Below are positions 7,742 to 27,991 of a stretch of DNA of 41,162 nucleotides, one piece after another; within the stretch, counting starts at the first letter, position 1; every line of letters begins with the position of its first letter. The notes under the pieces are model-generated. The model was not told the origin of the DNA. It saw only the letters and a program-made list of their open reading frames with translations, and ran no database searches. The position numbers and the translations under genes are program-made. Source of the stretch: Rebecca billardiae RCC1528 (Eukaryota > Protista > Haptophyta); contig OZ260670.1 of NCBI GenBank assembly GCA_965240325.2, forward strand, positions 1-41,162, read 5' to 3'.

Positions 7742-8655
7742 AGTTGGATAGGTAGATCCCTCACGGGATTTTCCCCCCTTAAGATCCGTACGTGAGACTT
7801 TCACCTCATACGGCTCCGACCCAAAGACTTGGTCGATTAGTCGGCAGCAATAATACCTTCTATCTTCCAAGCGGCCCTTAATGCTTCCTTTTTAGAGTGA
7901 GTAGCCTCAGCGTGGCAAGACTCAAAAAGTTTTTTTTTCCTCACAAGTAAAAAGTCATTTGCATTAAAAGCCCTAACAATCGAAAGTTGAAGTTTGCGCA
8001 AGTCAAAATGTGCCTTACGTCAATTAATAGAATCTCAGAGTAGGGATAATAGAGTTTTAACCATAAAACTGAATGGCCGCTACCCATATTAGTCTCGTAC
8101 ACTAGATAACTATTAATCCCTCTAACTCGAAGGTTTTCGCTTTGTAGCCCCATAGGCAAGTCAGCAAGCCTCTCGGCCAGGGCAAATTTTGAACCCTTAT
8201 CCTTTCGATTATAGAAAGGCATTCGCTTTTTACCCGTTCTTTTACCCAGTGTCATATAAGGTTGGATTGCTCCAACCCGAGTCCATGTGAACTGACAGTG
8301 GGCTTACCAAGTTCTACAATAGTTACCAATAAAATCCCCTTAGCTGCCCTCTTTACACCGGCGATATCGTCAAGACTAAGCAAGGGACTTCTCAGCCCTT
8401 GCTCCCATCGCGATCCCATAAAATACTAGAGTATGAGATTTCCCTATAACGATGCGTGAATTACGAGGGTTCGCTTCCGCTCAGCATAGGGATTGAGCCT
8501 CGCTCTCTAGCCCCTCCTAGTTAGAAACTAGAGCTACTTTGTCAGTAGAGCTTCACACCACCGGATTACTCCAGCCGCATGTCTACCTAGACTTATCCCA
8601 GTCAAGAAAGGATAGCAGATCTAACTACATTAACTATTGCAACTTCTTGTCGCAC
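7742..8655 (-). mobile_element. cox1 intron 1: ORF-less group IIB-like intron (copy A of 3), 914 nt
   Basis: 5' GTGCGACAAGAAG; domain V GAGCCGTATGAGGTGAAAGTCTCACGTACGGATC; near-identical to 22568..23480 and 27077..27991. Confidence 0.9.
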
Positions 8656-8672
8656 GAGAAAGTATTAGCCAT
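8656..8672 (-). CDS. cox1: cytochrome c oxidase subunit 1, exon 1 (17-nt micro-exon)
   Basis: ATG GCT AAT ACT TTC TC directly before GTGCG; joins exon 2 as [14 protein letters not shown]; five exons total 1515 nt (504 aa + stop). Confidence 0.82.
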
Positions 8673-8711
8673 GTATAAAAAATCCGAGCAAAAAGAGCCA
8701 ATATGGTTTTT

Positions 8712-8786
8712 ACGGAATGAAGGGACTTGAACCCTTGACCTACTGCTCCCAAAGCAGTCGCGCTACCGAAACTGCGCCACATTCCG
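8712..8786 (-). tRNA. trnP: tRNA-Pro(UGG)
   Basis: Cloverleaf; anticodon arm ACTGC-TTTGGGA-GCAGT. Confidence 0.95.
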
Positions 8787-8797
8787 TCTTGTTAGTA

Positions 8798-8869
8798 TAG
8801 GCCCGGTGGGGTTCGAACCCACGGCTTCCGGTTTAAAAGACCTACACTCTACCACTGAGCTACGAGCCT
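8798..8869 (-). tRNA. trnK: tRNA-Lys(UUU)
   Basis: Cloverleaf; anticodon loop CTTTTAA. Confidence 0.93.
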
Positions 8870-10370
8870 AGAAAAAAAAAAGAAATGCTTTAGGGCTGCA
8901 TGTCATAAGAAAAAGCAATCCGCAGAGGGCACTAATAAGAAAACTAGACGTTTGTGATGGTGCAGTATTCCAAAAAAAAGAGGTTTCGTCAAAAAAATGG
9001 ACTTTAATTATACGTATGTAGTAAAAACAGGCTAGCACACTTAAAAAAACAGTGATTGTTGGAGCTAGAATAAAGCCAGACTGTATAGAAGATAAAAACA
9101 TTTGGTACTTAGCAAAAAAACCAATAAATGGTGGAATACCTGCAAGTGAAAATAGAGGTATTGCAAAACCTAAACCAAGTAAGGGGTTCACCTTTATAAT
9201 ACCTACAGCCTCATAAAAAGTAGGATTCTCTAATGTAGATCCACGTTCGCGGACATTTAAAACAAATAAAAAAATACAAGCGGTCGTAAATAAGTAAACA
9301 ATAATATAAGTAAAAAGAGCTTGTACTCCAAAATCTACGGTAGAACTTAAAGCAAGCATTAAAAACCCGTTATGTCCTATTGTACTATATGCGATTAACC
9401 GCTTTAATCGTCGTTGAAAAAGAGCACCAAGGGTACCTAAAGCGACGGAAATAACAGCGCATTGCAGTAAAATGGGTTGCCAAAGAAAAGATAAAGGTAA
9501 TAAAGTGTCGAATAAGAGACGATGCACCAACAAAAATAGAGCTACTTTGGGTACTAAAGAAAAGAAAGCCGTGACTGACGTAGGTGAACCTTCGTAGACA
9601 TCAGCTACCCAAAAATGAAAAGGAGCTACGCCGAGTTTAAATAGAAAAGCTATAATGATAAATAGGGCACCTAATTGTAATCCTATAGAATACGTAAAAA
9701 CGTCGTAGCTTCCCCCAAAAAGAGAAAGGTTACTGCAAAAAAGTTTTAGTTCTAAAAAGTTTAACGTGCCAGTAACACCATAAATTAAAGAAATACCAAA
9801 AAGTAAAAAACAAGAAGCAACGGCACCACTGATAAAGTACTTTACTCCAGCCTCAATAGCATAATCGGATGTTCTTCTAAAGCAGGCAAGCACATAAAAA
9901 GTGAGACCTTGTAATTCAACGCACAAGAAAAGTGATAGAAAGTCCGAAACTCCTGTAAGGAAAATTAAACTAGATATCGCAATTAAGATGCAACAACAAA
10001 ACTCATTGGAAGCTTCTGGAAATTCTTTAAAAAAAGAAAGAGTAATAACAAAAAAGAGTAAAGAGCTTATTAAAGTAAAGAATCTACCAAAAAGAGATAA
10101 AGAATCAGAAAGGTAGCTACTTGAAAAAGAAAACCAAAAAGACGAAGGAAGTTCGCAGAAGAAACAAATAAATAGACTTAAGAGTAATATTAAAATAGCG
10201 GACCATTTAGTAGCATTACTAAAACTAAAGAATCCAAGAGTTCTCTGGTTTTGAAGCAAAAGGACCCAAATCAACAAAGCTACCGTGGCTGTGACAAGAA
10301 AAAGTTCAAGAGCTAGGGAATGCTCAAATCCCAAAAAAGAAAAATAAAAATCTTGACTGTGTAAAATCAC
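8868..10370 (-). CDS. nad2: NADH dehydrogenase subunit 2 (GTG start)
   Basis: ELQGL, EAGVKYF, FKLGVAPFHFW, LAGIPPFIGFFAK motifs. Confidence 0.96.
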   Translation of the reverse strand: MILHSQDFYFSFLGFEHSLALELFLVTATVALLIWVLLLQNQRTLGFFSFSNATKWSAILILLLSLFICFFCELPSSFWFSFSSSYLSDSLSLFGRFFTLISSLLFFVITLSFFKEFPEASNEFCCCILIAISSLIFLTGVSDFLSLFLCVELQGLTFYVLACFRRTSDYAIEAGVKYFISGAVASCFLLFGISLIYGVTGTLNFLELKLFCSNLSLFGGSYDVFTYSIGLQLGALFIIIAFLFKLGVAPFHFWVADVYEGSPTSVTAFFSLVPKVALFLLVHRLLFDTLLPLSFLWQPILLQCAVISVALGTLGALFQRRLKRLIAYSTIGHNGFLMLALSSTVDFGVQALFTYIIVYLFTTACIFLFVLNVRERGSTLENPTFYEAVGIIKVNPLLGLGFAIPLFSLAGIPPFIGFFAKYQMFLSSIQSGFILAPTITVFLSVLACFYYIRIIKVHFFDETSFFWNTAPSQTSSFLISALCGLLFLMTCSPKAFLFFF

Positions 10371-10388
10371 CCGAATAATTACGAAATG

Positions 10389-10796
10389 TTAAAGAATACG
10401 TGCTTTTAATGGTAACTTATGTTTTGCCTTTAAAAATACAGTGCTCACAAACTTTCTAGAATTGCCAAGTACTCTAAAAAGTACTTTTCCTGGAAGGGCT
10501 CGAAAGAGCCAAAGGTGCATACGTCCTTTTCCCTTACCCATTCGTGCTTTTTCAGGCTTTTTAGTTTTTGCAATATCTGGGAAGACGCGTAACCATAAAA
10601 AAGCACGTTTCTTTAGGCCCCGCTTTAGTACACGGCGGGTGGCTTCGAATTGACGAGAAGTAATAAAGCCCAGAGAATTTGCACAAATATCAAAAGAATA
10701 AAAGTTTTTAGACCGTTTCTTATCAGAAACAAAAGTGGGATTAACTCTCCCTTTCCTAAACTTTTTTAGTGACCTACGTGTTTTTGGAAAAAGCAT
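10389..10796 (-). CDS. rpl16: ribosomal protein L16
   Basis: MLFPK..K.RKG, QFEATRR, RVFPD..TKKP..RMGKGKG. Confidence 0.93.
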   Translation of the reverse strand: MLFPKTRRSLKKFRKGRVNPTFVSDKKRSKNFYSFDICANSLGFITSRQFEATRRVLKRGLKKRAFLWLRVFPDIAKTKKPEKARMGKGKGRMHLWLFRALPGKVLFRVLGNSRKFVSTVFLKAKHKLPLKARIL

Positions 10797-10849
10797 TTGC
10801 AAAAAGTCCGAGAGGTATGAGCAGTAAAAGGCTCGCCGCCTCCGACCTG

Positions 10850-11870
10850 GATTTGAACCCAGCTACTTTAGGAAGGCGGGGCTCTTATGTGGGCAAAGGA
10901 AAAAAGAAGAGCCTACTAAGTAAGGACTAAAGGCCACCACCAGTTTTCTTTAACGGAACTGAACTAATCTTGCGCATAGCACTAGACATGGTCCTAACCC
11001 GCTGTGGCTCACGAAAGTCGCGCAATGTGAACCTTCTCCCTAAGAAACAGACACCATTTTTCGCGCCCGCGTCCTTAATATAGAAGGTACCGACAATACC
11101 CGATAGCAAAAGAAAGCAGCGAATTTCCTCCAGGAGTTGAACAGTGGATGCTTCGGAACTATTAACTCCTATCAGAACAGACCGCCCACACCGTACATAG
11201 TAAATACGGCTACCTGCGTCTGAATGTAGGGTAGTAGGAACTTTTAGCTTAAGCGTTCCTAGGCGAAGAAGGTCTAAGCGCAGATGCTCTTTTGCCTCTG
11301 CGCAACCAGAGCTTTCCAATTCCTTTAGTTTGCGGATCTCCCGCGTTACATTAATATACGCGGGATTGTCTATTCGATAAGTACCACTTTTTTCTAGAAT
11401 TTTCTTTTTTCAGCGAGAAAAAGGTCAAAGGTAGAAAAAAAGCTAAATAGGGTCGAGAACAAACCTCGGAAAGCAGGATACCCTTGCTGTGTTTTAAGGT
11501 ACTCAAGAAGACAAAAAAAATCAAAAAAGGTAGTGGAGTCCGCATGACGGGAAATAAGATGTATTAAAGTAGTATTGTCCGGTTCGATAGGCTCGAGATC
11601 CCCAACAATAAACCAACGTATTCCCGTCCAGCTATGGATACCATCAAATGTACGTGATTTCCTCTTCTGAGCGAGGCAACTAGGACAACCAAATGAAATT
11701 ACAAGTAAGTTAAAAACCCGCTCAAGACGAATTGACAGCATTTTTAAACGATCAAAGTGAGCAGTGTTAAAAGAGGAAAAGCGCCTTAGCGAAAAATGAA
11801 ATTTTTTTAGTGACCTACGTGCTTGTAGTGAAAGGCGTCTGTAAGAAATCCGAGGAACCTGAGATAAAAA
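10850..11870 (-). pseudogene. Free-standing degenerate group II intron RT/maturase relic (RT domains ~1-7, start of X), frameshifted
   Basis: ORFs 11394..11939 and 10927..11409 align colinearly with the intron 2 protein: WTGIRWFIVGDL~[12 protein letters not shown]; GYPAFRGLFSTL..FDLF~[16 protein letters not shown]; RIYYVRCGRSVLIGVN~[16 protein letters not shown]; VCFLG~VLFLG. Confidence 0.8.
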
Positions 11871-11881
11871 GAGGCTTGCCG

Positions 11882-11953
11882 CTCTCCAGGCTGGAATTGA
11901 ACCAGCGACCTTGCGGTTAACAGCCGAATGCTCTACCACTGAGCTACTGAAGA
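11882..11953 (-). tRNA. trnN: tRNA-Asn(GUU)
   Basis: Cloverleaf; anticodon loop CTGTTAA. Confidence 0.95.
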
Positions 11954-11970
11954 GGGCAAAAAACCAAATA

Positions 11971-12510
11971 TTAAATACTTAAAGCTTTGGAAACAGAAAG
12001 GAGAGAACCTACTGAGTATGGACTCGACGAAGAAAAGATTGAATTAACGTGTTTTTTAGAAAGAATAGAAAAAATAAGTTCCGAAGAATACGCAAAGTTG
12101 CTCAATGAAGAAGACATAGATAACGCAGAAAGAGCAGAGTTATAAAAACGGAATTTACGAACGTAGGAATGTAGAACAGAGAGCAAGCTCTTTTGAAGAA
12201 TAACGGCCTTAAATACTTGAAGAAGTAATGTAACATGAGACACTGTATTAAATCCTATTTTTTTTGACGAAACCAAAGAAGTAATAGAAATTTTAGTTTG
12301 CTGGGCTGAGACAACAAACTCTTTTTCAAAATCGAGCCCCATGCTTTCAAAAGTGTTACCTAAGGCTTTTCCGCCAGAAGAGGCAACAGCGTTAAAAAAT
12401 ACGAAGAAACAAACAAAAAGAAAAACCTCCTCATTGTAAACAATAAACTCAGTTAAACTTAAAACAAGAATAACAATAGCACCAAAAAATTTAATATTTA
12501 TAGCTGACAT
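11971..12510 (-). CDS. atp4: ATP synthase subunit b (atp4/ymf39)
   Basis: N-terminal TM segment with IVYNEE motif followed by CFFVF; ~180 aa. Confidence 0.85.
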   Translation of the reverse strand: MSAINIKFFGAIVILVLSLTEFIVYNEEVFLFVCFFVFFNAVASSGGKALGNTFESMGLDFEKEFVVSAQQTKISITSLVSSKKIGFNTVSHVTLLLQVFKAVILQKSLLSVLHSYVRKFRFYNSALSALSMSSSLSNFAYSSELIFSILSKKHVNSIFSSSSPYSVGSLLSVSKALSI

Positions 12511-12528
12511 TTTAAAGCGAGATAATTC

Positions 12529-12600
12529 CAAGGGTTGAGGGTATCGAACCCTCGTTTCTGGTTTTGGAGACCAACGTTACTACCACTAAACTAAACCCTT
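12529..12600 (-). tRNA. trnW: tRNA-Trp(CCA)
   Basis: Anticodon loop CTCCAAA. Confidence 0.93.
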
Positions 12601-12607
12601 AGAAGGT

Positions 12608-12680
12608 ACCCTTTGCTGAGGCTCGAACTCAGGTTCTTCTGCGTATGAGACAGATGCATGAACCACAATGCTTCAAAGGG
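12608..12680 (-). tRNA. trnM: tRNA-Met(CAU), probably elongator
   Basis: Anticodon arm TCTGT-CTCATAC-GCAGA. Confidence 0.85.
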
Positions 12681-12686
12681 GCAAAA

Positions 12687-12759
12687 TGCCAAGAGACAGA
12701 ATCGAACTGTCGACACAAGGATTTTCAGTCCTTCGCTCTACCGACTGAGCTATCTTAGC
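12687..12759 (-). tRNA. trnF: tRNA-Phe(GAA)
   Basis: Anticodon loop CTGAAAA. Confidence 0.96.
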
Positions 12760-12761
12760 AA

Positions 12762-12832
12762 AGCGAGTAGCGGGAATCGAACCCGCAGCGCAAGCTTGGA
12801 AGGCTAGCGATTTACCTTTAATCGATACTCGC
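12762..12832 (-). tRNA. trnG: tRNA-Gly(UCC)
   Basis: GCG acceptor start; anticodon loop CTTCCAA. Confidence 0.94.
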
Positions 12833-12878
12833 AACGGTAAATTTAAATTAAAAAAGCAGAGAGAGCTAAAGAATTGAA

Positions 12879-12950
12879 CATACCTTATAGGATTCGAACC
12901 TACGGCCACCAGCTTAGAAGGCAGGTGCTCTACCGCTGAGCTAAAGGTAT
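12879..12950 (-). tRNA. trnR: tRNA-Arg(UCU)
   Basis: Anticodon loop CTTCTAA. Confidence 0.93.
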
Positions 12951-12962
12951 TTTATGCCTAAG

Positions 12963-13037
12963 GGTGAAAGAGGGGATTCGAACCCCTAATCTTTGGTACC
13001 ACAAACCAATGCTTTAACCGATTAAGCCACATTCACC
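12963..13037 (-). tRNA. trnH: tRNA-His(GUG)
   Basis: Anticodon loop TTGTGGT; encoded G-1. Confidence 0.94.
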
Positions 13038-13048
13038 TTCTTAAACTA

Positions 13049-13132
13049 AGAAAAAGGTAGGATTTGAACCTACGAACCTATAAGAGGAACAAGTTTACAG
13101 CCTGCCACTTTTGACCACTCAGTCACTTTTTC
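13049..13132 (-). tRNA. trnY: tRNA-Tyr(GUA)
   Basis: Anticodon loop CTGTAAA; long variable arm. Confidence 0.94.
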
Positions 13133-13134
13133 AT

Positions 13135-13206
13135 TGGAGATAGCCGGACTTGAACCAGCGACCTTCTGTATGCAAAACAGAAGCTCTACCACTGAGCTAT
13201 ATCCCC
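13135..13206 (-). tRNA. trnA: tRNA-Ala(UGC)
   Basis: GGGGATA acceptor with G3:U70; loop TTTGCAT. Confidence 0.96.
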
Positions 13207-13211
13207 GAAAC

Positions 13212-13284
13212 TAGGGATGGAAGGGTTTGAACCTTCGATGCCGGCGTCAAAGGCCGGAGCTTTGACCTACTTAGCTACACCCCT
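13212..13284 (-). tRNA. trnQ: tRNA-Gln(UUG)
   Basis: Anticodon arm CCGGC-CTTTGAC-GCCGG. Confidence 0.93.
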
Positions 13285-13334
13285 TAAATCTTTTTGGGTC
13301 ATAAATACTTCAAGACAAACGTCAAATTAGAGAT

Positions 13335-13712
13335 TTAGCTCTTGTGACGCAAGTATAAATTAAGTCGACGGGTAGAAACTTTGATAGGACTCACATTTTG
13401 AAGCTCCTGGTGAAAGCACCAACGAACAATACCTAGAGAAGCGGAACCCTCTTTAGAAATTTTTTTTTCAAAAGGCAAAGAAATAAAAGTTCGAACTAAT
13501 GAAAAAAACTCTAAGTGAGAACCACGTACAGAACTTTCTTCTGTATGTAGCGTTAAACCTTCGCTAGATTTTTTAAGTACACGTTTTCTCACTTTTAAGA
13601 TAGTAGCAACAGCAGGTAAAATATAACGTAAATTTATAAAATAAAAGAGAGTAAATAAAAAAAGTACCCAAAAAACTTGTGAGAAAAACGAAAAATGGTC
13701 TAGTTGTGGCAT
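13335..13712 (-). CDS. atp8: ATP synthase subunit 8
   Basis: MPQLD..F.SQ.FW N-terminus; LP..ILKVRK. Confidence 0.93.
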   Translation of the reverse strand: MPQLDHFSFFSQVFWVLFLFTLFYFINLRYILPAVATILKVRKRVLKKSSEGLTLHTEESSVRGSHLEFFSLVRTFISLPFEKKISKEGSASLGIVRWCFHQELQNVSPIKVSTRRLNLYLRHKS

Positions 13713-13733
13713 ATTATAATTACTGGACTTGAG

Positions 13734-13805
13734 TAAGCCTGGGTGGAATTGAACCACCGACTTTACCCTTATCAAGGGTACACTCTACCTCTGAGTTACA
13801 AGCTT
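13734..13805 (-). tRNA. trnI: tRNA-Ile(GAU)
   Basis: Anticodon arm TACCC-TTGATAA-GGGTA. Confidence 0.95.
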
Positions 13806-13844
13806 AATACAACCTCTTCTGCAGAGGCTGAAACATAAAATAAG

Positions 13845-14606
13845 TTATATCTGTGAAAGAACCCATGAAACGTATTTGTCTAAAGAAACAGACTCTACAA
13901 CAATAGGCATAAACCCGTGATTTACACCACAAATTTCGCTACATTGCCCATAAAAAACTCCTTCTCTGTTAAAAAAAACGGATGTTTGGTTTAGTCGACC
14001 AGGACAAGCATCCATTTTCACCCCTAAAGAAGGTACGGCCCAGCTATGTAGAACATCTGCAGCGGTAACAAGAATTCGGATATGTGTACGGCTGGGTAGT
14101 ATTACCCGATTATCTACTTCTAATAAACGAAGCTCTCCTTCACTGAGATCGTCCTCAGGAACCATATAACTATCGAAAGCTAAAGTTTCGATGCCCTCCC
14201 CACTAACAAAGTCGGAGTACTCATAAGCCCAGAACCATTGATTACCTATACATTTTATAGTCATTGCAGGGTCAACAATTTCATCTATAGAGTAAAGTAG
14301 CGCAAAAGAGGGAATAGCTATAATAACTAAAATTAAACTAGGAGTTACTGTCCAGATAATTTCAATAAGCGTACCGTGTACTACGCCAGCGTCAGAAGGC
14401 TCCGAGTAAGAAAGGTGATTAGCTCTAGAGTAAGTAATTAAAGCCCAAGATAAAGAGACAAGAACAAAAAAACAAATAAAAACTAAAAAAAACATAAGGT
14501 CGTGGTGTAGGTTGATAATACCTTCCATCACAGGTGTAGCGGCGTCCTGAAAGCCAAATTGCCAAGGAGTTGACGAATCAAAAAAGTTTAAAAAGCTAAA
14601 AATCAT
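13845..14606 (-). CDS. cox2: cytochrome c oxidase subunit 2
   Basis: [25 protein letters not shown] CuA motif. Confidence 0.98.
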
Positions 14607-14621
14607 AAATGTGAAAAATTT

Positions 14622-14693
14622 TTGGCAATAAAGGATTTGAACCTTTGACCTTTTCGGTGTAAACGAAAAGCTCTACCGCTGAGCTAATTGCCA
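14622..14693 (-). tRNA. trnV: tRNA-Val(UAC)
   Basis: Anticodon loop TTTACAC. Confidence 0.95.
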
Positions 14694-14737
14694 AAAAAGA
14701 ATAAGCGCAGATTTTCATGAGAGAACCTAATTTTAAA

Positions 14738-16238: not shown

Positions 16239-16260
16239 ATAAAAGCGACTTTGCGCAAGC

Positions 16261-18808: not shown

Positions 18809-18848
18809 AAAAAAAGAAAATAATTTAAAAAAAAGGTTCTAACAATAA

Positions 18849-19226: not shown

Positions 19227-19251
19227 TTTACAAAGAAAGGAGTTGCAAAAA

Positions 19252-19416
19252 CTAGAACTGCTTGCGCTTTTTTATAGCTTTTACTAAAAGGTAAGAGTTT
19301 ATACGAAAAGTCTGATGAGCGATATTTGCTCTTTTAGAACGGTTAGTGAAAAAAAAAGAGTTCCAACGGTTATGTCTATAAGTACGAAAAGAAAGAGGAA
19401 TTGACTTACGAGCCAT
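19252..19416 (-). CDS. rps3: ribosomal protein S3-like N-terminal fragment (54 aa)
   Basis: [11 protein letters not shown]...WNS.F resembles the S3 N-terminus (MxxKxxPxxxR...W.S.W); no C-terminal S3 domain seen. Confidence 0.55.
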
Positions 19417-19444
19417 TTTAAAAAAGAAAAAAAGCATGCACAGC

Positions 19445-22110
19445 AAAAGTTTTTAATAATTAGTGTTTTGGTCCACAAAGAGCAGAAAAAACCTAACGAA
19501 GTTTTATTATAAAACAGTAAAAAAGAAACGGCCGAAAAAGGTTTCCCGCTTAAGATGCCTTCAGCAGTACTAACACCACTCTGCGTAGCTGAAAAGGCCG
19601 TAAAGACTCACAAACAAGAGGCAGAGTCCACTTGCTCCTCTCGTACTAAAGCTAAATTTTCTTGGTTTCAGTGGATCTAGAAGATATAAAAAGAACTGTC
19701 TCACGACGTTCTGAACTCACCTCACGTACCCTTTTAAATGACGAACAGTCATACCCTTTGCACCTTTTTCAGCACAAGGATAGAGCGAGGCAACATCGAG
19801 GCACTTAATTTTTGCAGCGATATGTACTCTAAGCAAACTGTAGCCTGTTATCCCTAGCGTGACTTTTATCCGTTGATCGAAAGCCTTTCCATACAGGACT
19901 TTCGGGTCACTATGACCGACTTTTCGTCTCTGCGCGGTCTGTAGAACCTAGCAGTCAAGCAAGTATATACCATTACGCTTTAGAGCAGAAAAAACAACCC
20001 CTAACTTACCTTTGTACAACTCCGTTACTCTTTAGGAGTTTTCCGCCCCAGAAAAACGAGCAACCTGCCGCGGTTTAGCGATGACTATGAACAAACCAAT
20101 TGGACTGAGAGTGGTTTTTCAAGGACGCTAAAAAGCTCCCACTTAGACTACACAAAGAACAAAAGTTTTGTAACGACAGGCTCAAGTAAAGCGGCATAGG
20201 GTCTTCTTGTCTTTCTAGATCAGGTGCGCATCTTCACACACAATTCAATTTCACAAAGTCAACCTATGAGACAGTAGAGGCATTGTTACACCATTCATGC
20301 AGGACACCAATTATGTGACAAGGAATTTCGCTTCGCTTAGAACGGTTAGAGTTACCGCTGCCGTTTACTACAACTTATGGAAAAAGCAAAATCACTTTTT
20401 ACTTTCGTTAATTAGCACTGGGCAGGTGTCAAACCCTATACTTCATTTCTGAATTAGCAGGGTCCTGTGTTTTTGTTAAACAGTCACACCTCTCAATATT
20501 TACGGCGTTTCAGGTTGCCCTAAAAAGCCACTCCCTTCTACCGAAGATACGGGAATATTTTGCCGAGTTCCTTATAGGCTGTTATCTCTATCGCTATAGG
20601 CGCTTTAACGCCAACCTACCTGCGTCGGTATAAAGTACGGTCTTTTAAAATTAAGAAAAGAAAAAAAAAATCTTTTCGTTACTATTGCTTTTTCCAGGAG
20701 AACGATTAAAAGCCCAAAAATTTTTGAACATTAAACGAGTTCTCGTCACAATAGAAAAGGCTTAATAAATTCCCATCTAAATGGCTTTCGCCAGACAATA
20801 AGGGACCGGCTTTTTCTCCGCAAACTTCTTTTCGGAGAAAACCTTAGGTTTATAGCGGATTGGCTTCAATACCAAAAATTTCGTTACTCATCCTAGTATA
20901 AGCAATTCTGAACTCTTCAAAAAACTTTACAATTTTTCTTCAACAAGATACAGAACGTTTAGCTACCACCAAAAAAAAATGGACTTTTTTCTTCAAGGGA
21001 AGAAAACACACCAATTTCACAGTTTGCGCCTTCGGTGATTTATACCAAACCCTATGAATTTTCGGCTTTATTTACCTGTAAGCAAGTGAGCTATTACGCT
21101 TTCATTAAAAGGTGGCTGCTTCCAAGCCTACATCCTTGCTGTTATTAGAAAATAACAACCTTTAGACTTAACAAATCTTTAGGACCTTATGCAACAATCT
21201 GGGCTGTTTCCCTTTTGACAAAAGACCTTATCGCCTAATGTCCGACTCTCTACAAAAAAAAACGCAACATTTTAAGTTTCCAAAAGTGCAGTAACAATTA
21301 AATGCCCCACAACTTAAAGAGAGCTTTACCTCTGCGCTTTTTAGGTAGAGGCACTACCTCAATAGCTTTCGCAAAAAACCAGCTATCTCAAAGTTCGATT
21401 GGCTTTTCACCGCTAACCAAAGCTCACCTCAGCCTATTGCAACAGACACGAGTAAAGCCCAAAAGCCAGGCCATGGTTAGATCACTTTGTTTCGGGTATT
21501 TTTACGCAAACTGGAAAACACAATTAATGTTTTACGCTTTAACTACGCCTTCTTTTTTAAATTAGGCTTGCTTACGAAAAAAACTCACTAGGCCGTTATG
21601 CAAAAAGTACTTTTTTAATAAAAAAGGAAGTTATTAAAGTTTCATAATCTTAGTTTCACTCCCTCAAAGGGTTCTTTTCAGCCTTTCCCTCACGGTACTC
21701 AATTCACTATAGCTTAGCTTTTTTGTTATTATAAGAGGAAGGTACCCCTTTCTTCAAGCGAAAAACCACTTTAATTTAAAAATAAGAAACTTTCAAGAAG
21801 GCTACGGGACTAAAACCCTCTACGGTAAATTAACCTGAATCGTTGAAAGCCTTAGAGCACGCGTTCTTTCGCCAATACTAACGTACTTTTCTGTTGATAT
21901 ATGGATAGGTTACTTAGATGTTTCAGTTCACCTAACAGTAGGAAAGCAACCTAACATAGCTGCAAACCGGAATAATAGGAACAAAAAACCTATTATAACA
22001 AAAGTTTTCTTTATAGAATGTCTTTTGCATGGGAAAACCCTGCTAAGAATTTCAAAAACGTCTTACTTTAAAAGCTAGCGAGGAATCCACTTTAATAAAA
22101 GTTGTTTGCG
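19445..22110 (-). rRNA. rnl: large subunit rRNA (ends approximate)
   Basis: GGGATAACAGGCT, CAGAACGTCGTGAGACAG, GAAATTCCTTGTC, GAGTACCGTGAGGGAAAG motifs. Confidence 0.96.
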
Positions 22111-22172
22111 GAGCACAAAATCGTTTACATTAGTTCAAATAAAACTTTAGATAATTAAAAGGGTCAGCTTTG

Positions 22173-22567
22173 TTAAGCACCACCCCACCAATATACTGCT
22201 ACAAAAAGAAACAGCCAGACAACATCAACGAAATGCCAGTAAAAAATTGCGGCTTCTAATCCGATATGATGCTCTTTTGAAAAGTGAAAACACATCAAAC
22301 GATATAGGCAAACAGCCAAAAACGTAGTACCTATAAGAACATGAAAACCATGAAACCCTGTTGCCATAAAAAAAGTCGACCCAAAAACAGAATCAGAAAT
22401 AGAGAAAGGCGCACTAGCGTATTCTAGACCTTGGAAACCAGTAAAAATCAGAGCTAAAACGATAGTAAAAACCAAACTTATAACGGCATCGTTATGCTTA
22501 CCGAAAATAATAGCATGATGGCACCAAGTAACAGTAGCTCCGGACAAAAGAAGTATTAAAGTATTAA
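22173..22567 (-). CDS. cox3: cytochrome c oxidase subunit 3, exon 2
   Basis: [15 protein letters not shown]...TGFHGFHV...[12 protein letters not shown]. Confidence 0.96.
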
Positions 22568-23480
22568 AGTTGGATAGGTAGATCCCTCGCGAGATTTTCC
22601 CCCCTTGAGATCCGTACGTGAGACTTTCACCTCATACGGCTCCGACCCAAAGACTTGGTTGATCAGACAGCAGCAATAATTCCTTCTATCTTCCAAGCGG
22701 CTCTTAATGCTTCGTTTTTAGAGTGAGTAACCTCAGCGTGACAAGACTTATGAAGTTTTTTTTTCCTCACAAATAAAAAGTCATTTGCATTAAAAGCCCT
22801 AACAATCAAAAGCTGAAGTTTGCGCAAGTCAAAATGTGCCTTACGTCAATTAAATAGAGTTCCAGGGTAGAGATAATTGAGTTTTAGCCATAAAACTGAA
22901 TGACCGCTACCCATATTAGTCTCGTACACTTGGAAACGATTAATCCCTCTTACTCGAAAGTTTTCGCTTTGTAGCCTCATAGATAAGTAGGCAAGCCTCT
23001 CGGCCAGGGCAAATTTTGAACCCCTATCCCTTCGATTAAAGAAAGGCATTCGCTTTTTATCCGTTCTTTTACCCAGTGTCATATAAGGAAGGATTACTCC
23101 AGCCCGAGTCCAAGTGGACTGACAGTGGGCTTACCAAGTTCTACAATAGTTACCAATAAAATCCCCTTAGCTGCCCTCTTTACACCGGCGAACCGTCAAG
23201 ACTAAACAGGGGACTGCCCAGCCCCTGTTCCTATCGCGATCTCATGAAGTACTAGAGTATGAGATTTCAAATTTACGATGCGTACATACAAGGGTTCGCT
23301 TCCGCTCAGCATAGGAATTGAGCCTCGCTCTCTAGCCCCTCCTAGTTAGGAACTAGAGCTACTTTGTCAGTAGAGCTTCACACCACCGGATTACTCTAGT
23401 CGCATGTCTACTTAGGCTTATCCCAGTCATGAAAGGATAGTAGATTTAACTACATTAACTATTGCAACTTCTTGTCGCAC
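22568..23480 (-). mobile_element. cox3 intron: ORF-less group IIB-like intron (copy B), 913 nt
   Basis: GTGCGACAAGAAG...CTATCCAACT; splicing restores WQIPA-L-NT; near-identical to copies A and C. Confidence 0.92.
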
Positions 23481-23901
23481 GGGCGGGGATTTGCCAAGGA
23501 TTAAAAGGCTCTATACCTTTTGGAGGCCAAATAGCCCCTATTTCTATAGTAGGAGCGATGCTAGCGCTAAAGAATGCCCAAAAGAAAGCAAAAAAAAACA
23601 TCACTTCAGAAACAATAAAAAGAATTACGCCATTACGCAGACCTTCTTGAACAACAAGAGTATGGTGCCCTTCAAAGGTTCCCTCGCGTACGACATCACG
23701 CCACCAAATAAACATGCAAATTGTCGTAATAAAAAGACTAATAAAAAGAAGAGCTTCACCCCCAGAATGCGAGTGAAAGTACATAACCGCACCAATAGCA
23801 GCAGCTAATGCAGAAAAAGAAGTAGCAAGAGGCCACGGGCTTGGATCTACAAGATGAAAACCGTGGCGCTGTGAGAAATAGCGAACAGAAGAAAGATACA
23901 T
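23481..23901 (-). CDS. cox3: cytochrome c oxidase subunit 3, exon 1
   Basis: [27 protein letters not shown]. Confidence 0.96.
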
Positions 23902-23910
23902 AAAAATACT

Positions 23911-24174
23911 TTAAAGAGTTTTTTTTTTTGTTTTTTTTTTTGGACGCATACGAAAGCGAAAAAGCTCGCCACCTTTTTTACCAACTAAAAAATCAGAAGA
24001 GGAGATTTTTTCAAGAGAGAAACCTTTTTGTATTACAAACGAAGATTTAAGAAACTCAGGGATAACAGTATTTTGCTTAAAAATTCGAAAGGCTCTAGGT
24101 ATTCTATTATCAACAAGGCAATGTACAAAAAAAGGGGAAGGCATTACAGGAAGTTTAGATGAGGAGCGAGCCAC
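23911..24174 (-). CDS. rps19: ribosomal protein S19 (likely GTG start; TTG at 24210 is an alternative)
   Basis: (M)ARSSSK.P, VIPEF, VGKKGGE resemble S19 (RS..K.P / I.P.F / VG.K.GEF). Confidence 0.7.
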   Translation of the reverse strand: MARSSSKLPVMPSPFFVHCLVDNRIPRAFRIFKQNTVIPEFLKSSFVIQKGFSLEKISSSDFLVGKKGGELFRFRMRPKKKTKKKTL

Positions 24175-24289
24175 ATTTTTTACACTTACACAAGACCTTA
24201 AAAAGGTCAAAAAAGAATAGATTTAATTAAAAAATCCGAGGAATTAAATCGCAAATAAAGAAGAAAGCAAAGCTTTTACAAGAGTCTAA

Positions 24290-26320
24290 CTAATCAAAAC
24301 AAGTAGAAACTAGAAAAAAAGAAAGGCTTAAGGAAACCAATGTAATAAAAGAAAAACCACTATCTATAAAAAGCCCTTGAAAACTTGAAAGCAGCAAAAA
24401 GAAAGCTGAGCTTAGGACAAAGAAAAAAATATAATGGTAAAGTAAGCCCGTCTGATTTTTTGAAAAATTAGAAAGTAAAGATTGCGAAGAAACCAAAGCA
24501 CCGAAAGGACCTAGCTGTTCAATATAACCTTTGTCTAAAGAAAGGAAAGTATATCTGTAGCCTAAAGTCATTAATTTATGAGCAATAAATTCGTTAAAAA
24601 CCTGATCAAAGTGCCATTTTGCGGCTAAAAACTTTTGAGCAGGGATAGCTACAAAGCTAAAGTGTTTAAGTAACATAAAAATATAGCGCTTCCAGACTAA
24701 AGAGTTAGTAGAGCTCAGCAGAGCAAAAGCTAAGAAGAAACCCAGTAGCCCTAAAAAAAAAGGAATATGTTTGAGTAAAACGGGCAAAAACTCTGCCTCT
24801 ACTAGAACTGACGAACTTGGCATAGAGAAGAGAACACCATTCCAGGTATTTGTACCTAAGCCAACGAAAAGCTCTTTAGTAAGAAAACCTACAAAAATGG
24901 CACCGAAAGATAATATGACCAAAGGAAGAGACATAGCCAATGGAGCTTCGTGAGCGCTTTCAACGTATACTTTATAAGAACTACGTGTATTTAAAAAACT
25001 TAAGTGTAACAAACGGTAAGAGTATAGAGAGGTGCAGAGAGCCGCCAGAAGGCCTAAAATATGAGCGAAAGAACCAAACCAAGTGTTATGGGCCAGAGCT
25101 AGCTCAAGAATAGTATCTTTGGAATAGAACCCCGTTAAAAAGGGAAATCCCGTAAGGGCGAGAGAGCCGATTAAGATAAAAGTGTATGTAAAAGAGAAAA
25201 GCTTACCTAAGGCCATTTTTCGCATGTCCTGTTCATCACAGATACCGTGAATGACACAACCTGCACTTAAAAAAAGGAGTGCTTTAAAAAAAGCATGATT
25301 CGCCAAGTGAAAGAAAGCTACCGAATACTGCGACAAACCGCAAGCGAAGACCATGTAACCTAATTGACTACATGTTGAATAAGCAATAACTCGTTTCATG
25401 TCATTTTGTACAAGACCTGTTGAAGCAGCAAAAAAAGCAGTACTTGCACCAACGATACAAAGTATCGAGAGAATTTGTGGGGCTTGCTCGAAGAGAGGAG
25501 CACTTCTTATAATAACAAAAACTCCTGCAGTAACCATGGTAGCCGCATGTATTAACGCAGAAACGGGAGTAGGGCCTTCCATTGCATCAGGAAGCCAAGT
25601 ATGAAGACCTAACTGAGCAGACTTACCTACGGCACCCCAGAAGAGTAAAAAACAGATAACGTCTAAAAAAGAAAAAGAATAACCTAGAAAAGAAAAAAGG
25701 GGGTTCTGCAAAGCACACGCGGAAAGGAAGACAGAGGCATAATCGAGACTATGAAAAAGAACAAAAATCCCACAGAGACCTAAGCAAAGACCCAGATCAC
25801 CCACGCGGTTGACAAGCATAGCTTTTATTGCAGCCTTGTTAGCTTGAATCCGCGTATTCCAAAAACTAATAAGAAGGTACGACACTAGACCTACACCTTC
25901 CCAACCAACAAACATTTGAGCAAAGTTATCGGAAGTAACAAGTAAAAGCATAAAAAAGGTAAACAAAGACAAATAGGACATAAAACGACAAAGGTGTGGA
26001 TCGTTTTCCATATAACTAGTGGCGTAAAGGTGTACTAAAGCAGAGACAGAAGTAACAACGACGAGCATACTAGCGCACAAACAATCAAAAAGAAAACCCC
26101 AAGAGACCACAAAGCTTTCAGCCACCATCCAGTCAACTAACTTTATGGAGCAAAGACTTTGGCAAATGCAAACCTCATAAAAGATGAAAAGTGATAAGAA
26201 TAAAGCCAAGAAAGTGCAAAAAGTAGTAAAAAGGCTAACACCCTGGCGACCAAGGAAGCGGCCACAGGAAGCAGCAACAATGAAGCTAAATAAAGGCAGA
26301 GCTACGACAGAAAGATACAT
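24290..26320 (-). CDS. nad5: NADH dehydrogenase subunit 5
   Basis: GWEGVG, GKSAQ.GLH.WLPDAMEGPTPVSALIHAATMV. Confidence 0.98.
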   Translation of the reverse strand: MYLSVVALPLFSFIVAASCGRFLGRQGVSLFTTFCTFLALFLSLFIFYEVCICQSLCSIKLVDWMVAESFVVSWGFLFDCLCASMLVVVTSVSALVHLYATSYMENDPHLCRFMSYLSLFTFFMLLLVTSDNFAQMFVGWEGVGLVSYLLISFWNTRIQANKAAIKAMLVNRVGDLGLCLGLCGIFVLFHSLDYASVFLSACALQNPLFSFLGYSFSFLDVICFLLFWGAVGKSAQLGLHTWLPDAMEGPTPVSALIHAATMVTAGVFVIIRSAPLFEQAPQILSILCIVGASTAFFAASTGLVQNDMKRVIAYSTCSQLGYMVFACGLSQYSVAFFHLANHAFFKALLFLSAGCVIHGICDEQDMRKMALGKLFSFTYTFILIGSLALTGFPFLTGFYSKDTILELALAHNTWFGSFAHILGLLAALCTSLYSYRLLHLSFLNTRSSYKVYVESAHEAPLAMSLPLVILSFGAIFVGFLTKELFVGLGTNTWNGVLFSMPSSSVLVEAEFLPVLLKHIPFFLGLLGFFLAFALLSSTNSLVWKRYIFMLLKHFSFVAIPAQKFLAAKWHFDQVFNEFIAHKLMTLGYRYTFLSLDKGYIEQLGPFGALVSSQSLLSNFSKNQTGLLYHYIFFFVLSSAFFLLLSSFQGLFIDSGFSFITLVSLSLSFFLVSTCFD

Positions 26321-26328
26321 AAAATAAA

Positions 26329-26688
26329 TTATTCCCACTCAAGAGCGCCTTTTTGCCATTCGAAAACAAACCCTACTGTAAGAATAAACAGAAACAAAAT
26401 CATAGACCAAAAACCAAAAGAACCTATATTTTCTAGAACGAGAGCCCAAGGAAATAAAAAGCTAATCTCTAGATCAAAAATAATGAAAAGGATAGCTACT
26501 AGATAAAATCGAACATCAAACTGGCTTCGAGCATCTTCGAAAGGATTAAAGCCACACTCATAAGCAGAAACTTTTTCCACATCAGCGGAACTGACACTAA
26601 GTAAAAAAGAAAGAACAAAAAGAGCAACAGAAAGAAACAGGCTAAACATCGAAAAAACTAAAAGGGTCGTAAATTCATAAATATACAT
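26329..26688 (-). CDS. nad3: NADH dehydrogenase subunit 3
   Basis: [23 protein letters not shown]. Confidence 0.97.
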
Positions 26689-26742
26689 AAAATAAAGGTA
26701 CAAAAAGCCTGCCAAGAAATCCGAGAATATAAAATGGATTAC

Positions 26743-27076
26743 TTAAATAACCCCTAAAACGAACGTGTGTAAAGTTTGAAGAACACTTTGTGGAAAGATA
26801 CCGAAAAAGAAAACTAGAATTACAAAAGGAAATAAAAGATAAAACTCACGACGAGATATATCAGAAACAGCTAAAACAAACAAGTTTTTAGGATTTCCAA
26901 AAAGTATTCTATTAGCGAGCCAAATAGAATAAGCTGCACCGAAAACTAAACTAAGGGAAGCCAGCAGAGTAGAAAAAGGGTTAGACTGAAACAGGCCGAT
27001 CAATACGAAAAATTCACCGACGAAACTACTTGTGAGAGGAAGACCTAAGTTTGCTAAAGTTAAGGATAGAAATATG
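26743..27076 (-). CDS. nad4: NADH dehydrogenase subunit 4, exon 2
   Basis: TLANLGLPLTSSFVGEF...AAYSIWL...DISRRE. Confidence 0.94.
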
Positions 27077-27991
27077 AGATGGATAGGTAGATCCCTCGCG
27101 GGATTTCCCCCCCGTGAGAACCGTACGTGAGACTTTCACCTCATACGGCTCCGACCCAAAGACTTGGTCGATTAGTCGGCAGCAATAATACCTTCTATTT
27201 TCCAAGCGGCTCTTAATGCTTCATCTTTAGAGTGAGTAGCCTCAGCGTGACAAGGCTTATGAAGTTTTTTTTTCCTCACAAGTAAAAAGTCATTTGCATT
27301 AAAAGCCCTAACAATCGAAAGTTGAAGTTTGCGCAAGCCAAAATGTGCCTTACGTCAATTAATAGAATCCCAGAGTAGGGATAATTGAGTTTTAATCATA
27401 AAATTGAATGACCGCTACCCATATTAGTCTCGTACACTTGATAACTATTAATCCCTCTAACTCGGAGGTTTTCGCTTTGTAGCCTCATAGGCAAGTCAGC
27501 AAGCCTCTCGGCCAGGGCAAATTTTGAACCCTTATCCTTTCGATTAAAGAAAGGCATTCGCTTTTTACCCGTTCTTTTACCCAGTGTCATATAAGATTAG
27601 ATTGCTCCAACCCGAGTCGTTGAGGACTGACAGTGGGCTTACCAAGTTCTACAATAGTTACCAATAAAATCCCCTTAGCTGCCCTCTCTACACCGGCGAT
27701 ATCGTCAAGACTAAACAGGGGACAGCCTAACCCCTGTTCCTATCGCGATCCCATAAAATACTAGAGTATGAGATTTCCCTCTAACGATGCGTGAATTACG
27801 AGGGTTCGCTTCCGCTCAGCATAGGGATTGAGCCTAGCACTACTAACCCCACCTAGTTAGGGGCTAGAGTTACTTTGTCAGTAGAGCTTCAGACCACCGG
27901 ATTACTCCAGTCGCATGTCTACCTAGGCTTATCCCAGTCAAGAAAGGATAGCAGATTTAACTGCATTAACTATTGCAACTTCTTGTCGCAC
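27077..27991 (-). mobile_element. nad4 intron: ORF-less group IIB-like intron (copy C), 915 nt
   Basis: GTGCGACAAGAAG...CTATCCATCT; splicing restores MPLFS-F-IFL; near-identical to copies A and B. Confidence 0.92.

What the first reader, a model, noticed from the sequence alone, without database searches (positions are those of the whole stretch)
7742..27991. Family of three non-autonomous group II introns whose exon-binding sites match three unrelated genes
Seen: near-identical 913-915-nt ORF-less introns sit in cox1 (7742..8655), cox3 (22568..23480) and nad4 (27077..27991), at sites with unrelated exon sequence. One conspicuous difference lies in a hairpin loop and tracks each 5' exon. GAGAAG (8388..8393) pairs with cox1 UUUCUC (6/6 with G:U). 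GGGCAG (23214..23219) pairs with cox3 CCGCCC (5/6). AGGCUG (27723..27728) pairs with nad4 UAGCUU (6/6 with G:U). A second variable patch tracks the upstream exon: caaat (23268) in cox3 and cctct (27778) in nad4, weaker in cox1. Established: EBS1/EBS2-IBS pairing sets group II target and splice specificity. Inference: a natural 'retargeted targetron' family, an ORF-less ribozyme that spread to new sites through EBS change and was mobilised in trans. No intact RT is encoded in any copy.
Basis: partly seen in the sequence, partly recalled or inferred. Interest (0 to 1): 0.9.

Follow-up and report, generated by a model that had tools for sequence, protein, structure and literature searches.

The report
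Retargeted ORF-less group II intron family
Three near-identical self-splicing-type introns that have lost their own reverse transcriptase sit in three different mitochondrial genes, each with guide sequences matching its own gene; this is a clean natural example of a process already known from a cyanobacterium and from algal chloroplasts.

Summary
Three 913-915-nt group IIB introns, 91.5-93.8% identical, interrupt cox1, cox3 and nad4 of a circular mitogenome from an unidentified eukaryote.

A covariance model places the variable hexamer in the terminal loop of the ID3 hairpin (EBS1). It places the second patch just 5' of the ID2 hairpin (EBS2).

I add a third tracking element, EBS3, in the coordination loop (A/A/G against exon +1 U/U/C).

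Related mitogenomes hold further family members in atp6, atp9, rns, rnl and a second cox3 site. Over eight sites, 87 of 96 EBS positions pair with their own exon, against 45.8 when exons are permuted. The true assignment is the unique best of 40,320.

ORF-containing relatives encode an RT/HNH protein. All three window copies keep its last 29 codons at the same deletion junction, so they probably spread after losing the ORF.

The helper RT is unknown: no cognate RT is in the window, only three non-cognate cox1-intron RTs.

The mechanism is already documented in Thermosynechococcus elongatus and in Oedocladium and Gloeotilopsis chloroplasts. This is a new member of a known kind, of moderate interest.

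The parts
7742..8655 (-). ORF-less group IIB intron in cox1 (914 nt). It lies 17 nt after the ATG at 8672.
   Evidence: 5' end GTGCGAC. Rfam D1D4-7 and D5/D6 hits. Alignments.
22568..23480 (-). ORF-less group IIB intron in cox3 (913 nt), at the site PWQIPA|LNT.
   Evidence: The junction is gap-free against intronless cox3 of L004 and L131.
27077..27991 (-). ORF-less group IIB intron in nad4 (915 nt), at the site MPLFS-F|IFL.
   Evidence: The junction is gap-free against intronless nad4 of L003 and L007.
8388..8393 (-). EBS1 of the cox1 copy (GAGAAG), at positions 3-8 of the 9-nt ID3 loop CUGAGAAGU. It pairs with IBS1 UUUCUC (8656-8661).
23214..23219 (-). EBS1 of the cox3 copy (GGGCAG). It pairs with IBS1 CCGCCC (23481-23486) at 5 of 6 positions.
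27723..27728 (-). EBS1 of the nad4 copy (AGGCUG). It pairs with IBS1 UAGCUU (27992-27997) at 6 of 6 positions, two of them G:U.
8442..8446 (-). EBS2 register of the cox1 copy (UAGGG). Only 2 of 5 positions pair with exon -13..-9 (CUAAU, 8664-8668). It differs by one nucleotide from the nad4 copy's EBS2.
23268..23272 (-). EBS2 of the cox3 copy (AUUUG). It pairs 5/5 with IBS2 CAAAU (23489-23493).
27777..27782 (-). EBS2 of the nad4 copy. GAGGG pairs with CUCUU (28000-28004), or AGAGG pairs with CCUCU (28001-28005). Either register gives 5/5.
8353..8353 (-). Candidate EBS3 (A) of the cox1 copy, in the coordination-loop motif UA[N]AG. It pairs with exon +1 U (7741).
23180..23180 (-). Candidate EBS3 (A) of the cox3 copy. 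It pairs with exon +1 U (22567).
27688..27688 (-). Candidate EBS3 (G) of the nad4 copy. It pairs with exon +1 C (27076).
7783..7816 (-). Domain V of the cox1 copy. It is identical in all three copies (also at 22609-22642 and 27118-27151) and has a GAAA loop.
7746..7778 (-). Domain VI of the cox1 copy, with a bulged A at 7749, 7 nt before the 3' splice site. The equivalent A is at 22575 and 27084 in the other copies.
7843..7929 (-). Remnant of the last 29 codons of an RT/HNH ORF in domain IV of the cox1 copy.
   Evidence: tblastn with the L133 RT, E = 6e-3. It is preceded by GTGAG plus an A9 tract.
22669..22755 (-). The same RT/HNH C-terminal remnant in the cox3 copy.
   Evidence: tblastn E = 5e-5, 52% identity.
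27178..27264 (-). The same RT/HNH C-terminal remnant in the nad4 copy.
   Evidence: tblastn E = 1e-4.
8656..8672 (-). cox1 exon 1 (ATGGCTAATACTTTCTC). It carries IBS1 and the weak IBS2.
5053..7764 (-). ORF made of cox1 exon 2 plus the intron 2 ORF (RVT_1 and Intron_maturas2, YADD intact). It is a non-cognate candidate helper.
1607..5014 (-). ORF made of cox1 exon 3 plus the intron 3 ORF (RVT_1 and Intron_maturas2, YADD intact). It is a non-cognate candidate helper.
39410..41158 (-). cox1 intron 4 ORF (maturase, YADD). It continues across the window ends and reads 1083 aa when the sequence is circularised.

Best explanation
What it is: the three elements are paralogous group IIB ribozyme introns.

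Origin: they descend from one RT/HNH-encoding intron of the kind still found, with its ORF, in cox3 and rnl of related mitogenomes. One copy lost almost the whole ORF from domain IV. That ORF-less form then colonised at least three sites in this mitogenome: cox1, cox3 and nad4.

How each copy recognises its exons: three guide elements in domain I do this.
- EBS1 is six nucleotides in the ID3 terminal loop and pairs with exon positions -1 to -6.
- EBS2 is five nucleotides just 5' of the ID2 hairpin and pairs with about -9 to -13.
- EBS3 is one nucleotide in the coordination loop and pairs with exon +1.
These elements differ between copies so that each matches its own gene.

Shown here: homology, architecture, the position of the guides, their covariation with the exons, the shared ORF deletion, and the absence of the introns at these sites in relatives.

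Inferred:
- That dispersal went by reverse splicing plus reverse transcription.
- That the RT came in trans, from a cognate ORF-containing copy since lost, from one of the three cox1-intron RTs, or from the nucleus.
- That the copies still splice.
- The order of EBS change relative to insertion.
For: Copies and intron hallmarks:
- Three collinear copies are 91.5-93.8% identical.
- They have Rfam group II hits, a GUGCGAC 5' end, an invariant D5 and a D6 bulged A at -8.

Structure of the ID arm:
- Covariance model R1 finds the arm in 10 introns.
- 93.5% of cells are paired, and 32 of 49 pairs show changes on both sides.
- 0 of 500 shuffles reach the observed values, and slid controls give 31-45% paired.
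- Within the window trio, 99.3% of cells are paired, with two compensatory pairs in the EBS1 stem.

Guide elements:
- In the model register, nine of the ten introns have a 9-nt loop of the form N-U-EBS1(6)-U. The L134 hairpin was not aligned by the model; I read its loop by eye.
- Own-exon pairing is 76 of 84 positions against 43.4 when permuted, the unique best of 5040.
- With eight sites it is 87 of 96 against 45.8, the unique best of 40,320.
- EBS3 pairs at 6 of 7 sites with three pair types, and also G:C in the L134 rnl intron.
- EBS columns are hypervariable (p = 2e-7).

ORF history:
- The RT remnant sits at the same place in all three copies.
- ORF-containing relatives exist: L133, L135 and L136 in cox3 at WYWH|FVDVVW, and L134 in rnl.

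Timing:
- Relatives have uninterrupted nad4, cox3 and cox1 5' ends.
- The window trio forms its own clade, and so does the atp6/atp9 pair of L007.
Against: - No RNA evidence of splicing was available.
- No cognate RT is found in the window. The only RTs present are of a different type, Intron_maturas2, and share no intron sequence with the family beyond D5.
- The cox1 copy's EBS2 does not match its exon (2/5).
- Elsewhere in the family, the atp9 EBS3 (C.C) and the rns EBS1 (4/6) do not fit.
- An in-frame GTG at 7764 inside D6 could allow COX1 translation without splicing of the first intron.
- The nearest intronless relatives are only about 80% identical in the nad4 protein, so 'recent' is relative.
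- The covariation counts were made on an alignment fitted to the model's structure.
Confidence: 0.85

Rival explanations
1. The intron dispersed while it still carried its ORF, so it was autonomous. The ORF-deletion allele later spread among the paralogues by gene conversion. On this view no trans-mobilisation of an ORF-less element ever happened.
For: The copies share long, highly similar flanks around domain IV. From general knowledge, organelle repeats commonly recombine. No cognate helper RT is present now.
Against: It needs three ORF-containing copies plus conversions that left the EBS patches untouched. Divergence of 6-8% is spread evenly along the copies, with no obvious conversion tracts. 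The same shared-breakpoint pattern in T. elongatus was read as deletion first, then proliferation (PMC2882425).
Confidence: 0.1
2. The introns are old residents of these three sites. They look alike only because concerted evolution homogenises them, while selection for splicing protects the EBS patches.
For: EBS columns are the most divergent parts of otherwise similar copies.
Against: None of the eight insertion sites is shared between the window and the L007, L133 or L134 lineages. All sampled relatives have uninterrupted nad4, cox3 (at this site) and cox1 5' ends. L007 shows an independent burst at other sites.
Confidence: 0.04
3. The copies are dead repeats, assembly artefacts or unspliced insertions, and the EBS matches are coincidental.
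For: No RNA data were available. The cox1 copy could in principle be bypassed through the GTG at 7764.
Against: The insertions interrupt essential genes at positions that restore perfectly conserved protein sequence. D5 is invariant, and 99.3% of ID-arm pairs are kept. The permutation tests give 1 in 40,320.
Confidence: 0.01

Closest known systems
Thermosynechococcus elongatus TeI3/TeI4 group II intron family (Mohr, Ghanem and Lambowitz 2010, PMC2882425)
   Same: ORF-less copies derive from one ORF-containing intron by a single deletion in domain IV, with shared breakpoints and ORF remnants. The family then diverged to new target sites. The RT of the ORF-containing relative (L133) has as its best solved homologue PDB 6ME0 chain C, E = 3e-100. 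From memory, that chain is the T.el4h RT.
   Different: The window family is in a eukaryotic mitogenome, with three copies rather than 28. No cognate RT remains in the genome. Mobility and trans-complementation were shown by experiment in T. elongatus and are not shown here.
Intragenomic proliferation of ORF-less group II introns in the chloroplasts of Oedocladium carolinianum (IIA; PMC5088586) and Gloeotilopsis (IIB; PMC5630911)
   Same: Closely related ORF-less organellar introns sit at unrelated sites. EBS1, EBS2 and the 3'-exon recogniser are hypervariable, yet complementary to each intron's own exons. The authors read this as retrohoming after EBS divergence, with no organelle-encoded helper.
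   Different: The compartment is a mitochondrion and the host lineage is an unidentified protist. Here the ORF-containing founder type is identified in related genomes, and an ORF remnant is visible in the ORF-less copies.
Engineered targetrons (retargeted Ll.LtrB, EcI5 and RmInt1 introns; RmInt1 rules in PMC3123198 and PMC4075523)
   Same: Specificity is changed by rewriting EBS1, EBS2 and EBS3 (or delta). The ribozyme can be ORF-deleted with the RT supplied in trans.
   Different: The window family is natural, not designed. There is no evidence of current mobility.
Paralogue families of mitochondrial group II introns in land plants (PMC10012718) and in the red alga Porphyridium (PMC8742464)
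   Same: Mitochondrial introns copied to new sites within a genome, mostly without their own maturase.
   Different: Most plant paralogues are much more diverged. The Porphyridium paper does not mention EBS at all. The window trio is 92-94% identical, so the guide changes can be read directly.

Membership tests
Group II intron | 5' consensus GUGYG, and a 3' end preceded by domain VI with a bulged branch adenosine 7-8 nt upstream | tested here: met
   GUGCGAC starts all three copies. The bulged A in CCU-A-UCC lies 7 nt before the 3' end. The intron ends ...ACU or ...UCU rather than the commoner AY.
Group II intron | Domain V: a 34-nt hairpin with the AGC triad and a GNRA loop, recognised by a covariance model | tested here: met
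   Rfam RF00029 scores 55-59.6 bits against a gathering score of 40 in each copy. The sequence GAGCCGUAUGAGGUGAAAGUCUCACGUACGG is identical in the three copies.
Group II intron | Domain I architecture, with a tetraloop-receptor-like motif for the D5 loop | tested here: met
   Rfam RF02012 scores 58-60 bits. The ID arm is supported by covariation. The motif CCUAUG...CUAAGG at the base of ID is near-invariant in seven introns: one member, L133, has C for U in the 5' half (CCUACG). Reading it as the zeta receptor is inference.
Subgroup IIB | The first nucleotide of the 3' exon pairs with EBS3 in the coordination loop. It does not pair with the nucleotide 5' of EBS1, which is what defines IIA. | tested here: met
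   The UA[N]AG position covaries with exon +1: A:U, G:C and C:G at 6 of 7 sites, plus G:C in L134. The nucleotide 5' of EBS1 is always U and does not track +1. The location matches RmInt1 EBS3 G329, on the 3' branch of ID (PMC3123198).
Subgroup IIB | EBS1 in the ID3 terminal loop and EBS2 in the ID2 region, pairing with contiguous or near-contiguous IBS1 and IBS2 | tested here: met
   IBS1 is at -1..-6 and IBS2 at -9..-13, with a 2-nt spacer.
Autonomous mobile group II intron (retroelement) | An intron-encoded RT/maturase in domain IV | tested here: not met
   Only a remnant of 29 codons survives. The largest internal ORF has no Pfam hit.
Non-autonomous ORF-less derivative family (T. elongatus TeI3 type) | All copies share one ORF deletion, with recognisable ORF remnants | tested here: met
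   The C-terminal remnant and the GTGAG + A9 junction are at the same place in all three copies. The N-terminal remnant is only about 5 nt, so that side is weak.
Non-autonomous ORF-less derivative family (T. elongatus TeI3 type) | A helper RT encoded elsewhere that splices or mobilises the ORF-less copies | not testable with these tools
   No cognate RT is in the window. Three non-cognate RT ORFs with YADD are present in cox1 introns 2-4. Whether they act on these introns needs an experiment.
Functional (spliced) intron | Ligated exons detectable in RNA | not testable with these tools
   Support is indirect only. The predicted junctions restore conserved protein sequence, and the ribozyme pairs are kept.

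The most novel reading that the evidence does not exclude
The ORF-less introns come from the bacterial-type RT (RVT_N/GIIM/HNH) lineage. The novel reading is that they are spliced, and were mobilised, by the non-cognate mitochondrial-type RT/maturases of cox1 introns 2-4. That would be cross-class trans-complementation: a shared splicing and mobility apparatus serving unrelated introns in one mitogenome. The cox1 copy, with EBS1 matched but EBS2 still nad4-like, would then be a snapshot of stepwise retargeting.
Probability: 0.1. Interest if true: 0.75.

Novelty: new member of a known kind. Interest (0 to 1): 0.5.

Why it matters
It is an unusually legible natural record of group II intron retargeting. 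The copies are 92-94% identical, so the guide changes stand out, and all three recognition elements (EBS1, EBS2, EBS3) covary with the exons.

The ORF-bearing founder type is identifiable in sister lineages. Independent bursts in two related mitogenomes show that the process recurs.

It extends the 'ORF loss, then proliferation with diverged targets' model from a cyanobacterium and green-algal chloroplasts to the mitochondria of an uncharacterised eukaryotic lineage. It also poses a testable question: which RT serves orphan introns?

It does not reveal a new mechanism.

Tried and rejected
1. Metagenome scan with a D5-D6 pattern. It returned 120 or more contigs that share only D5 with the family. 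Their ID arms score 20-29 bits at 54-66% GC. I take them to be unrelated introns, probably bacterial, from what I recognise as soil metagenome accessions.

2. Looking for an ORF-bearing parent inside the window. cox1 introns 2-4 share only about 73-78% identity over D5 and encode a different maturase type, so they are rejected as parents.

3. Identifying the organism.
- The nad4 and cox1 protein searches gave no named close relative. The best named nad4 hits are about 62-65% identical (Palpitomonas, mosses, Ostreococcus).
- A literature search on the genome length found nothing.

4. Global MAFFT mapping of the ORF deletion misaligned domain IV. A pairwise alignment of the D3/D4 5' part was no better than shuffled sequence. 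The 5' breakpoint therefore rests only on the shared GTGAG motif.

5. The IIA-type delta-delta' reading is rejected. The nucleotide 5' of EBS1 is an invariant U and does not track exon +1.

6. Hand-picked EBS loops were replaced by loops taken from the covariance-model register, to avoid choosing loops with the exon in mind.

7. The whole-intron RNAalifold fold misfolds D5/D6. It was used only for domain I.
Full report
**Context.** The window looks like a complete circular mitogenome of 41,162 bp and 39% GC.
- All 24 tRNAs, both rRNAs and all protein-coding genes identified here are on the minus strand.
- cox1 runs off the low end of the window and resumes at the high end. The ORF of its fourth intron reads 1083 aa without a stop when the ends are joined.
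- The organism could not be named. Its closest nad4 relatives (72-80% aa identity) are unnamed contigs from metagenomes and sequencing runs. The best named hits are about 62-65% identical.

**The observation.** Three collinear copies of 914, 913 and 915 nt lie at 7742-8655, 22568-23480 and 27077-27991, on the minus strand.
- They are 93.8% (cox1/nad4) and 91.5% (cox1/cox3) identical.
- Each starts with GUGCGAC and has Rfam hits to group-II-D1D4-7 and Intron_gpII.
- Each has an identical domain V, and a domain VI with a bulged A 7 nt before the 3' end.
- The flanks are COX1, COX3 and a Proton_antipo_M gene. Synteny with relatives identifies the last as nad4.
- Splicing at the stated boundaries is in frame. 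It gives MPLFS-F-IFLSL in nad4 and [16 protein letters not shown] in cox3. Both align without gaps to uninterrupted homologues in related mitogenomes.
- In cox1 the intron sits 17 nt after the ATG (exon 1 is ATGGCTAATACTTTCTC). This is a poorly conserved N-terminal extension.

**Where the variable patches sit.**
- Single-sequence and constrained alignment folds give the canonical ID arm.
- A covariance model built on that arm (R1) recovers it in the three copies and in seven further introns from related mitogenomes.
- On the seven-sequence alignment, 93.5% of cells are standard pairs and 32 of 49 pairs change on both sides. None of 500 shuffles reach the observed values. Sliding the partners gives 31-45% paired. 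One caveat applies: this alignment is fitted to the model.
- Within the window trio, 146 of 147 cells pair, with two compensatory changes in the stem that carries the variable loop.
- In the model's register, nine of the ten introns have a 9-nt terminal loop of the form N-U-(six variable nt)-U. The tenth, L134, was not aligned there; I read its loop by eye.
- The second patch is a 5-nt stretch in the single-stranded segment just 5' of the ID2 hairpin. That is EBS2.

**A third tracking element.** One position in the internal loop on the 3' strand of ID, the middle of UA[N]AG, is A, A, G in the cox1, cox3 and nad4 copies. The first nucleotide of the 3' exon is U, U, C.
- It is the only nad4-specific substitution in domain I that gives a Watson-Crick pair in all three copies.
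- Its location matches that of EBS3 in the IIB intron RmInt1, where G329 lies on the 3' branch of ID in the coordination loop (PMC3123198).
- The nucleotide 5' of EBS1 is always U and does not track exon +1. This argues against the IIA mode of 3'-exon recognition.

**Relatives.** Mitochondrial contigs with 72-80% nad4 identity share gene order with the window. Their nad4, their cox3 at this site and their cox1 5' ends are uninterrupted.
- One lineage (L007/L008) carries three more ORF-less family members. They lie in atp6, in atp9, and in the helix-45 loop of rns.
- Other lineages carry ORF-containing members. L133, L135 and L136/L137 have one at a second cox3 site, WYWH|FVDVVW. L134 has one in rnl at GGGATAACAGG|C.
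- The ORF encodes RVT_N, RVT_1, GIIM and HNH domains. Its best solved homologue is PDB 6ME0 chain C at E = 3e-100. From memory, that chain is the T.el4h RT of Thermosynechococcus elongatus.
- In a domain I tree the window trio forms one clade (support 95/97). The L007 atp6 and atp9 introns form another (100/98; 91% identical). Intragenomic duplication to new sites therefore happened independently at least twice.

**Covariation test.** EBS1 (loop positions 3-8 against exon -1..-6), EBS2 (five nt against -9..-13) and EBS3 (against +1) were scored in the fixed model register.

| Intron | EBS1 | EBS2 | EBS3 |
|---|---|---|---|
| window cox1 | 6/6 | 2/5 | 1/1 |
| window nad4 | 6/6 | 5/5 | 1/1 |
| window cox3 | 5/6 | 5/5 | 1/1 |
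| L007 atp6 | 6/6 | 5/5 | 1/1 |
| L007 atp9 | 5/6 | 5/5 | 0/1 |
| L133 cox3-b | 6/6 | 5/5 | 1/1 |
| L007 rns | 4/6 | 5/5 | 1/1 |

- These seven total 76 of 84. Exons permuted among introns give a mean of 43.4, and the real assignment is the single best of 5040.
- Adding the rnl intron, whose EBS1 CCUGUU pairs with AACAGG, gives 87 of 96 against 45.8. That is the single best of 40,320.
- For the window trio alone, the true assignment is the best of the six possible (32 against 18-27).
- Among the trio, 10 of 14 EBS columns vary against 98 of 902 others (p = 2e-7). Domain V does not vary at all.

**ORF loss.** tblastn with the L133 RT finds its last 29 residues (LHRTCHAQVTHSS...AAWK, the end of the HNH domain) at the same place in domain IV of all three window copies (45-52% identity; E from 5e-5 to 6e-3).
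- Immediately upstream, each copy reads GTGAGG followed by an A9 tract. GTGAG is how the L133 ORF begins.
- The three copies therefore share one deletion that removed roughly codons 3-507.
- The 5' side of the breakpoint rests on only a few nucleotides. An alignment of that region was not better than shuffled sequence.

**Helper.** The window holds no cognate RT.
- It does hold three RT/maturase ORFs with intact YADD in cox1 introns 2-4.
- These are of the Intron_maturas2 type. Their introns share nothing with the family beyond domain V.
- 'Mobilised in trans' is thus a reasonable inference from the shared deletion, but the helper is unknown. It could be a lost cognate copy, a non-cognate cox1 RT or a nuclear factor.
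- An alternative is that ORF-containing copies dispersed and the deletion then spread by gene conversion. I rate this lower but cannot exclude it.

**Imperfections worth recording.**
- The cox1 copy's EBS2 (UAUAGGG) does not fit its exon. It differs by one nucleotide from the nad4 copy's EBS2 (UAGAGGG), as if EBS1 had been retargeted and EBS2 had not.
- The cox3 copy's guides would pair 10 of 12 with the cox1 site.
- The nad4 IBS1 contains a Ser AGC codon where five relatives have TCN. The exons, not only the guides, may therefore have changed.
- An in-frame GTG at 7764 inside domain VI could in principle start COX1 translation without removing the first intron.

**Comparison with what is known.** The mechanism is published in three places:
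- T. elongatus (PMC2882425);
- Gloeotilopsis chloroplast IIB introns (PMC5630911).

Mitochondrial paralogue families are also known in land plants (PMC10012718) and Porphyridium (PMC8742464). I found no paper on this genome.

**Verdict.** It is a clean new example, in the mitochondria of an unsampled eukaryotic lineage, of a known kind of event.

Noticed in passing
window 31962-36206 (-): A 1414-aa ORF whose C-terminal part matches single-subunit (T7/mitochondrial-type) RNA polymerase: Pfam RNA_pol E = 1e-11, and PDB mitochondrial RNAPs at about 1e-5. Such ORFs in mitogenomes usually derive from linear plasmids. No neighbouring DNA polymerase ORF was looked for.
   Followed up: partly
window 1-8672 and 38945-41162 (-): cox1 spans the window ends and has four introns. 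Introns 2-4 carry RT/maturase ORFs fused in frame to the upstream exon, each with YADD. The intron 4 ORF reads 1083 aa across the circular junction.
   Followed up: partly
whole window, compared with L007, L130-L134: Every gene identified in the window is on one strand. Related mitogenomes with otherwise similar gene order have two oppositely oriented blocks: cox3-cox1-nad1-nad6-atp6-atp9-nad4-nad3-nad5 against nad2-rpl16-atp4-atp8-cox2-rns. This implies a large inversion in one lineage.
   Followed up: no
window 27992-27997, compared with L003, L007, L130-L132: The nad4 IBS1 (TAGCTT) includes a Ser AGC codon, whereas all five intronless relatives use TCN at that residue. It could be exon co-evolution with EBS1, or simply an old codon switch.
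   Followed up: partly
window 7764 (-): An in-frame GTG lies inside domain VI of the cox1 copy. The listed ORF 5053-7764 starts there, so COX1 with a short alternative N-terminus could be translated from unspliced RNA.
   Followed up: no
L007:19754-20504 (-): An ORF-less family member is inserted in the loop of helix 45 at the 3' end of the small-subunit rRNA (..GGTAGCCCTACGG|GAACTTGG..). Its EBS2 (5/5) and EBS3 fit, but its EBS1 pairs at only 4 of 6 positions.
   Followed up: partly
L133:1029-3514, L135, L136/L137: An ORF-containing intron occupies the same cox3 site (WYWH|FVDVVW) in at least three lineages. Their RTs are only 61-63% identical, which suggests an old, vertically kept 'home' site for the family.
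   Followed up: partly
L016, L012, L050, L057, L068, L082 and other contigs (recognised from memory as soil metagenome accessions): GC-rich contigs carry two or three copies of the same D5-D6 motif 0.4-2.4 kb apart. In several contigs an ID-arm match lies about 200-250 nt after a D5. This suggests tandem or nested IIB introns, probably bacterial and unrelated to the window family.
   Followed up: no
window 11394-11939 and 30405-30818 (-): ORFs of 181 aa and 137 aa have no Pfam hit. ORFs of the same length sit at the same syntenic positions in related contigs (L001 and L003), so they are probably real, unassigned mitochondrial genes.
   Followed up: no
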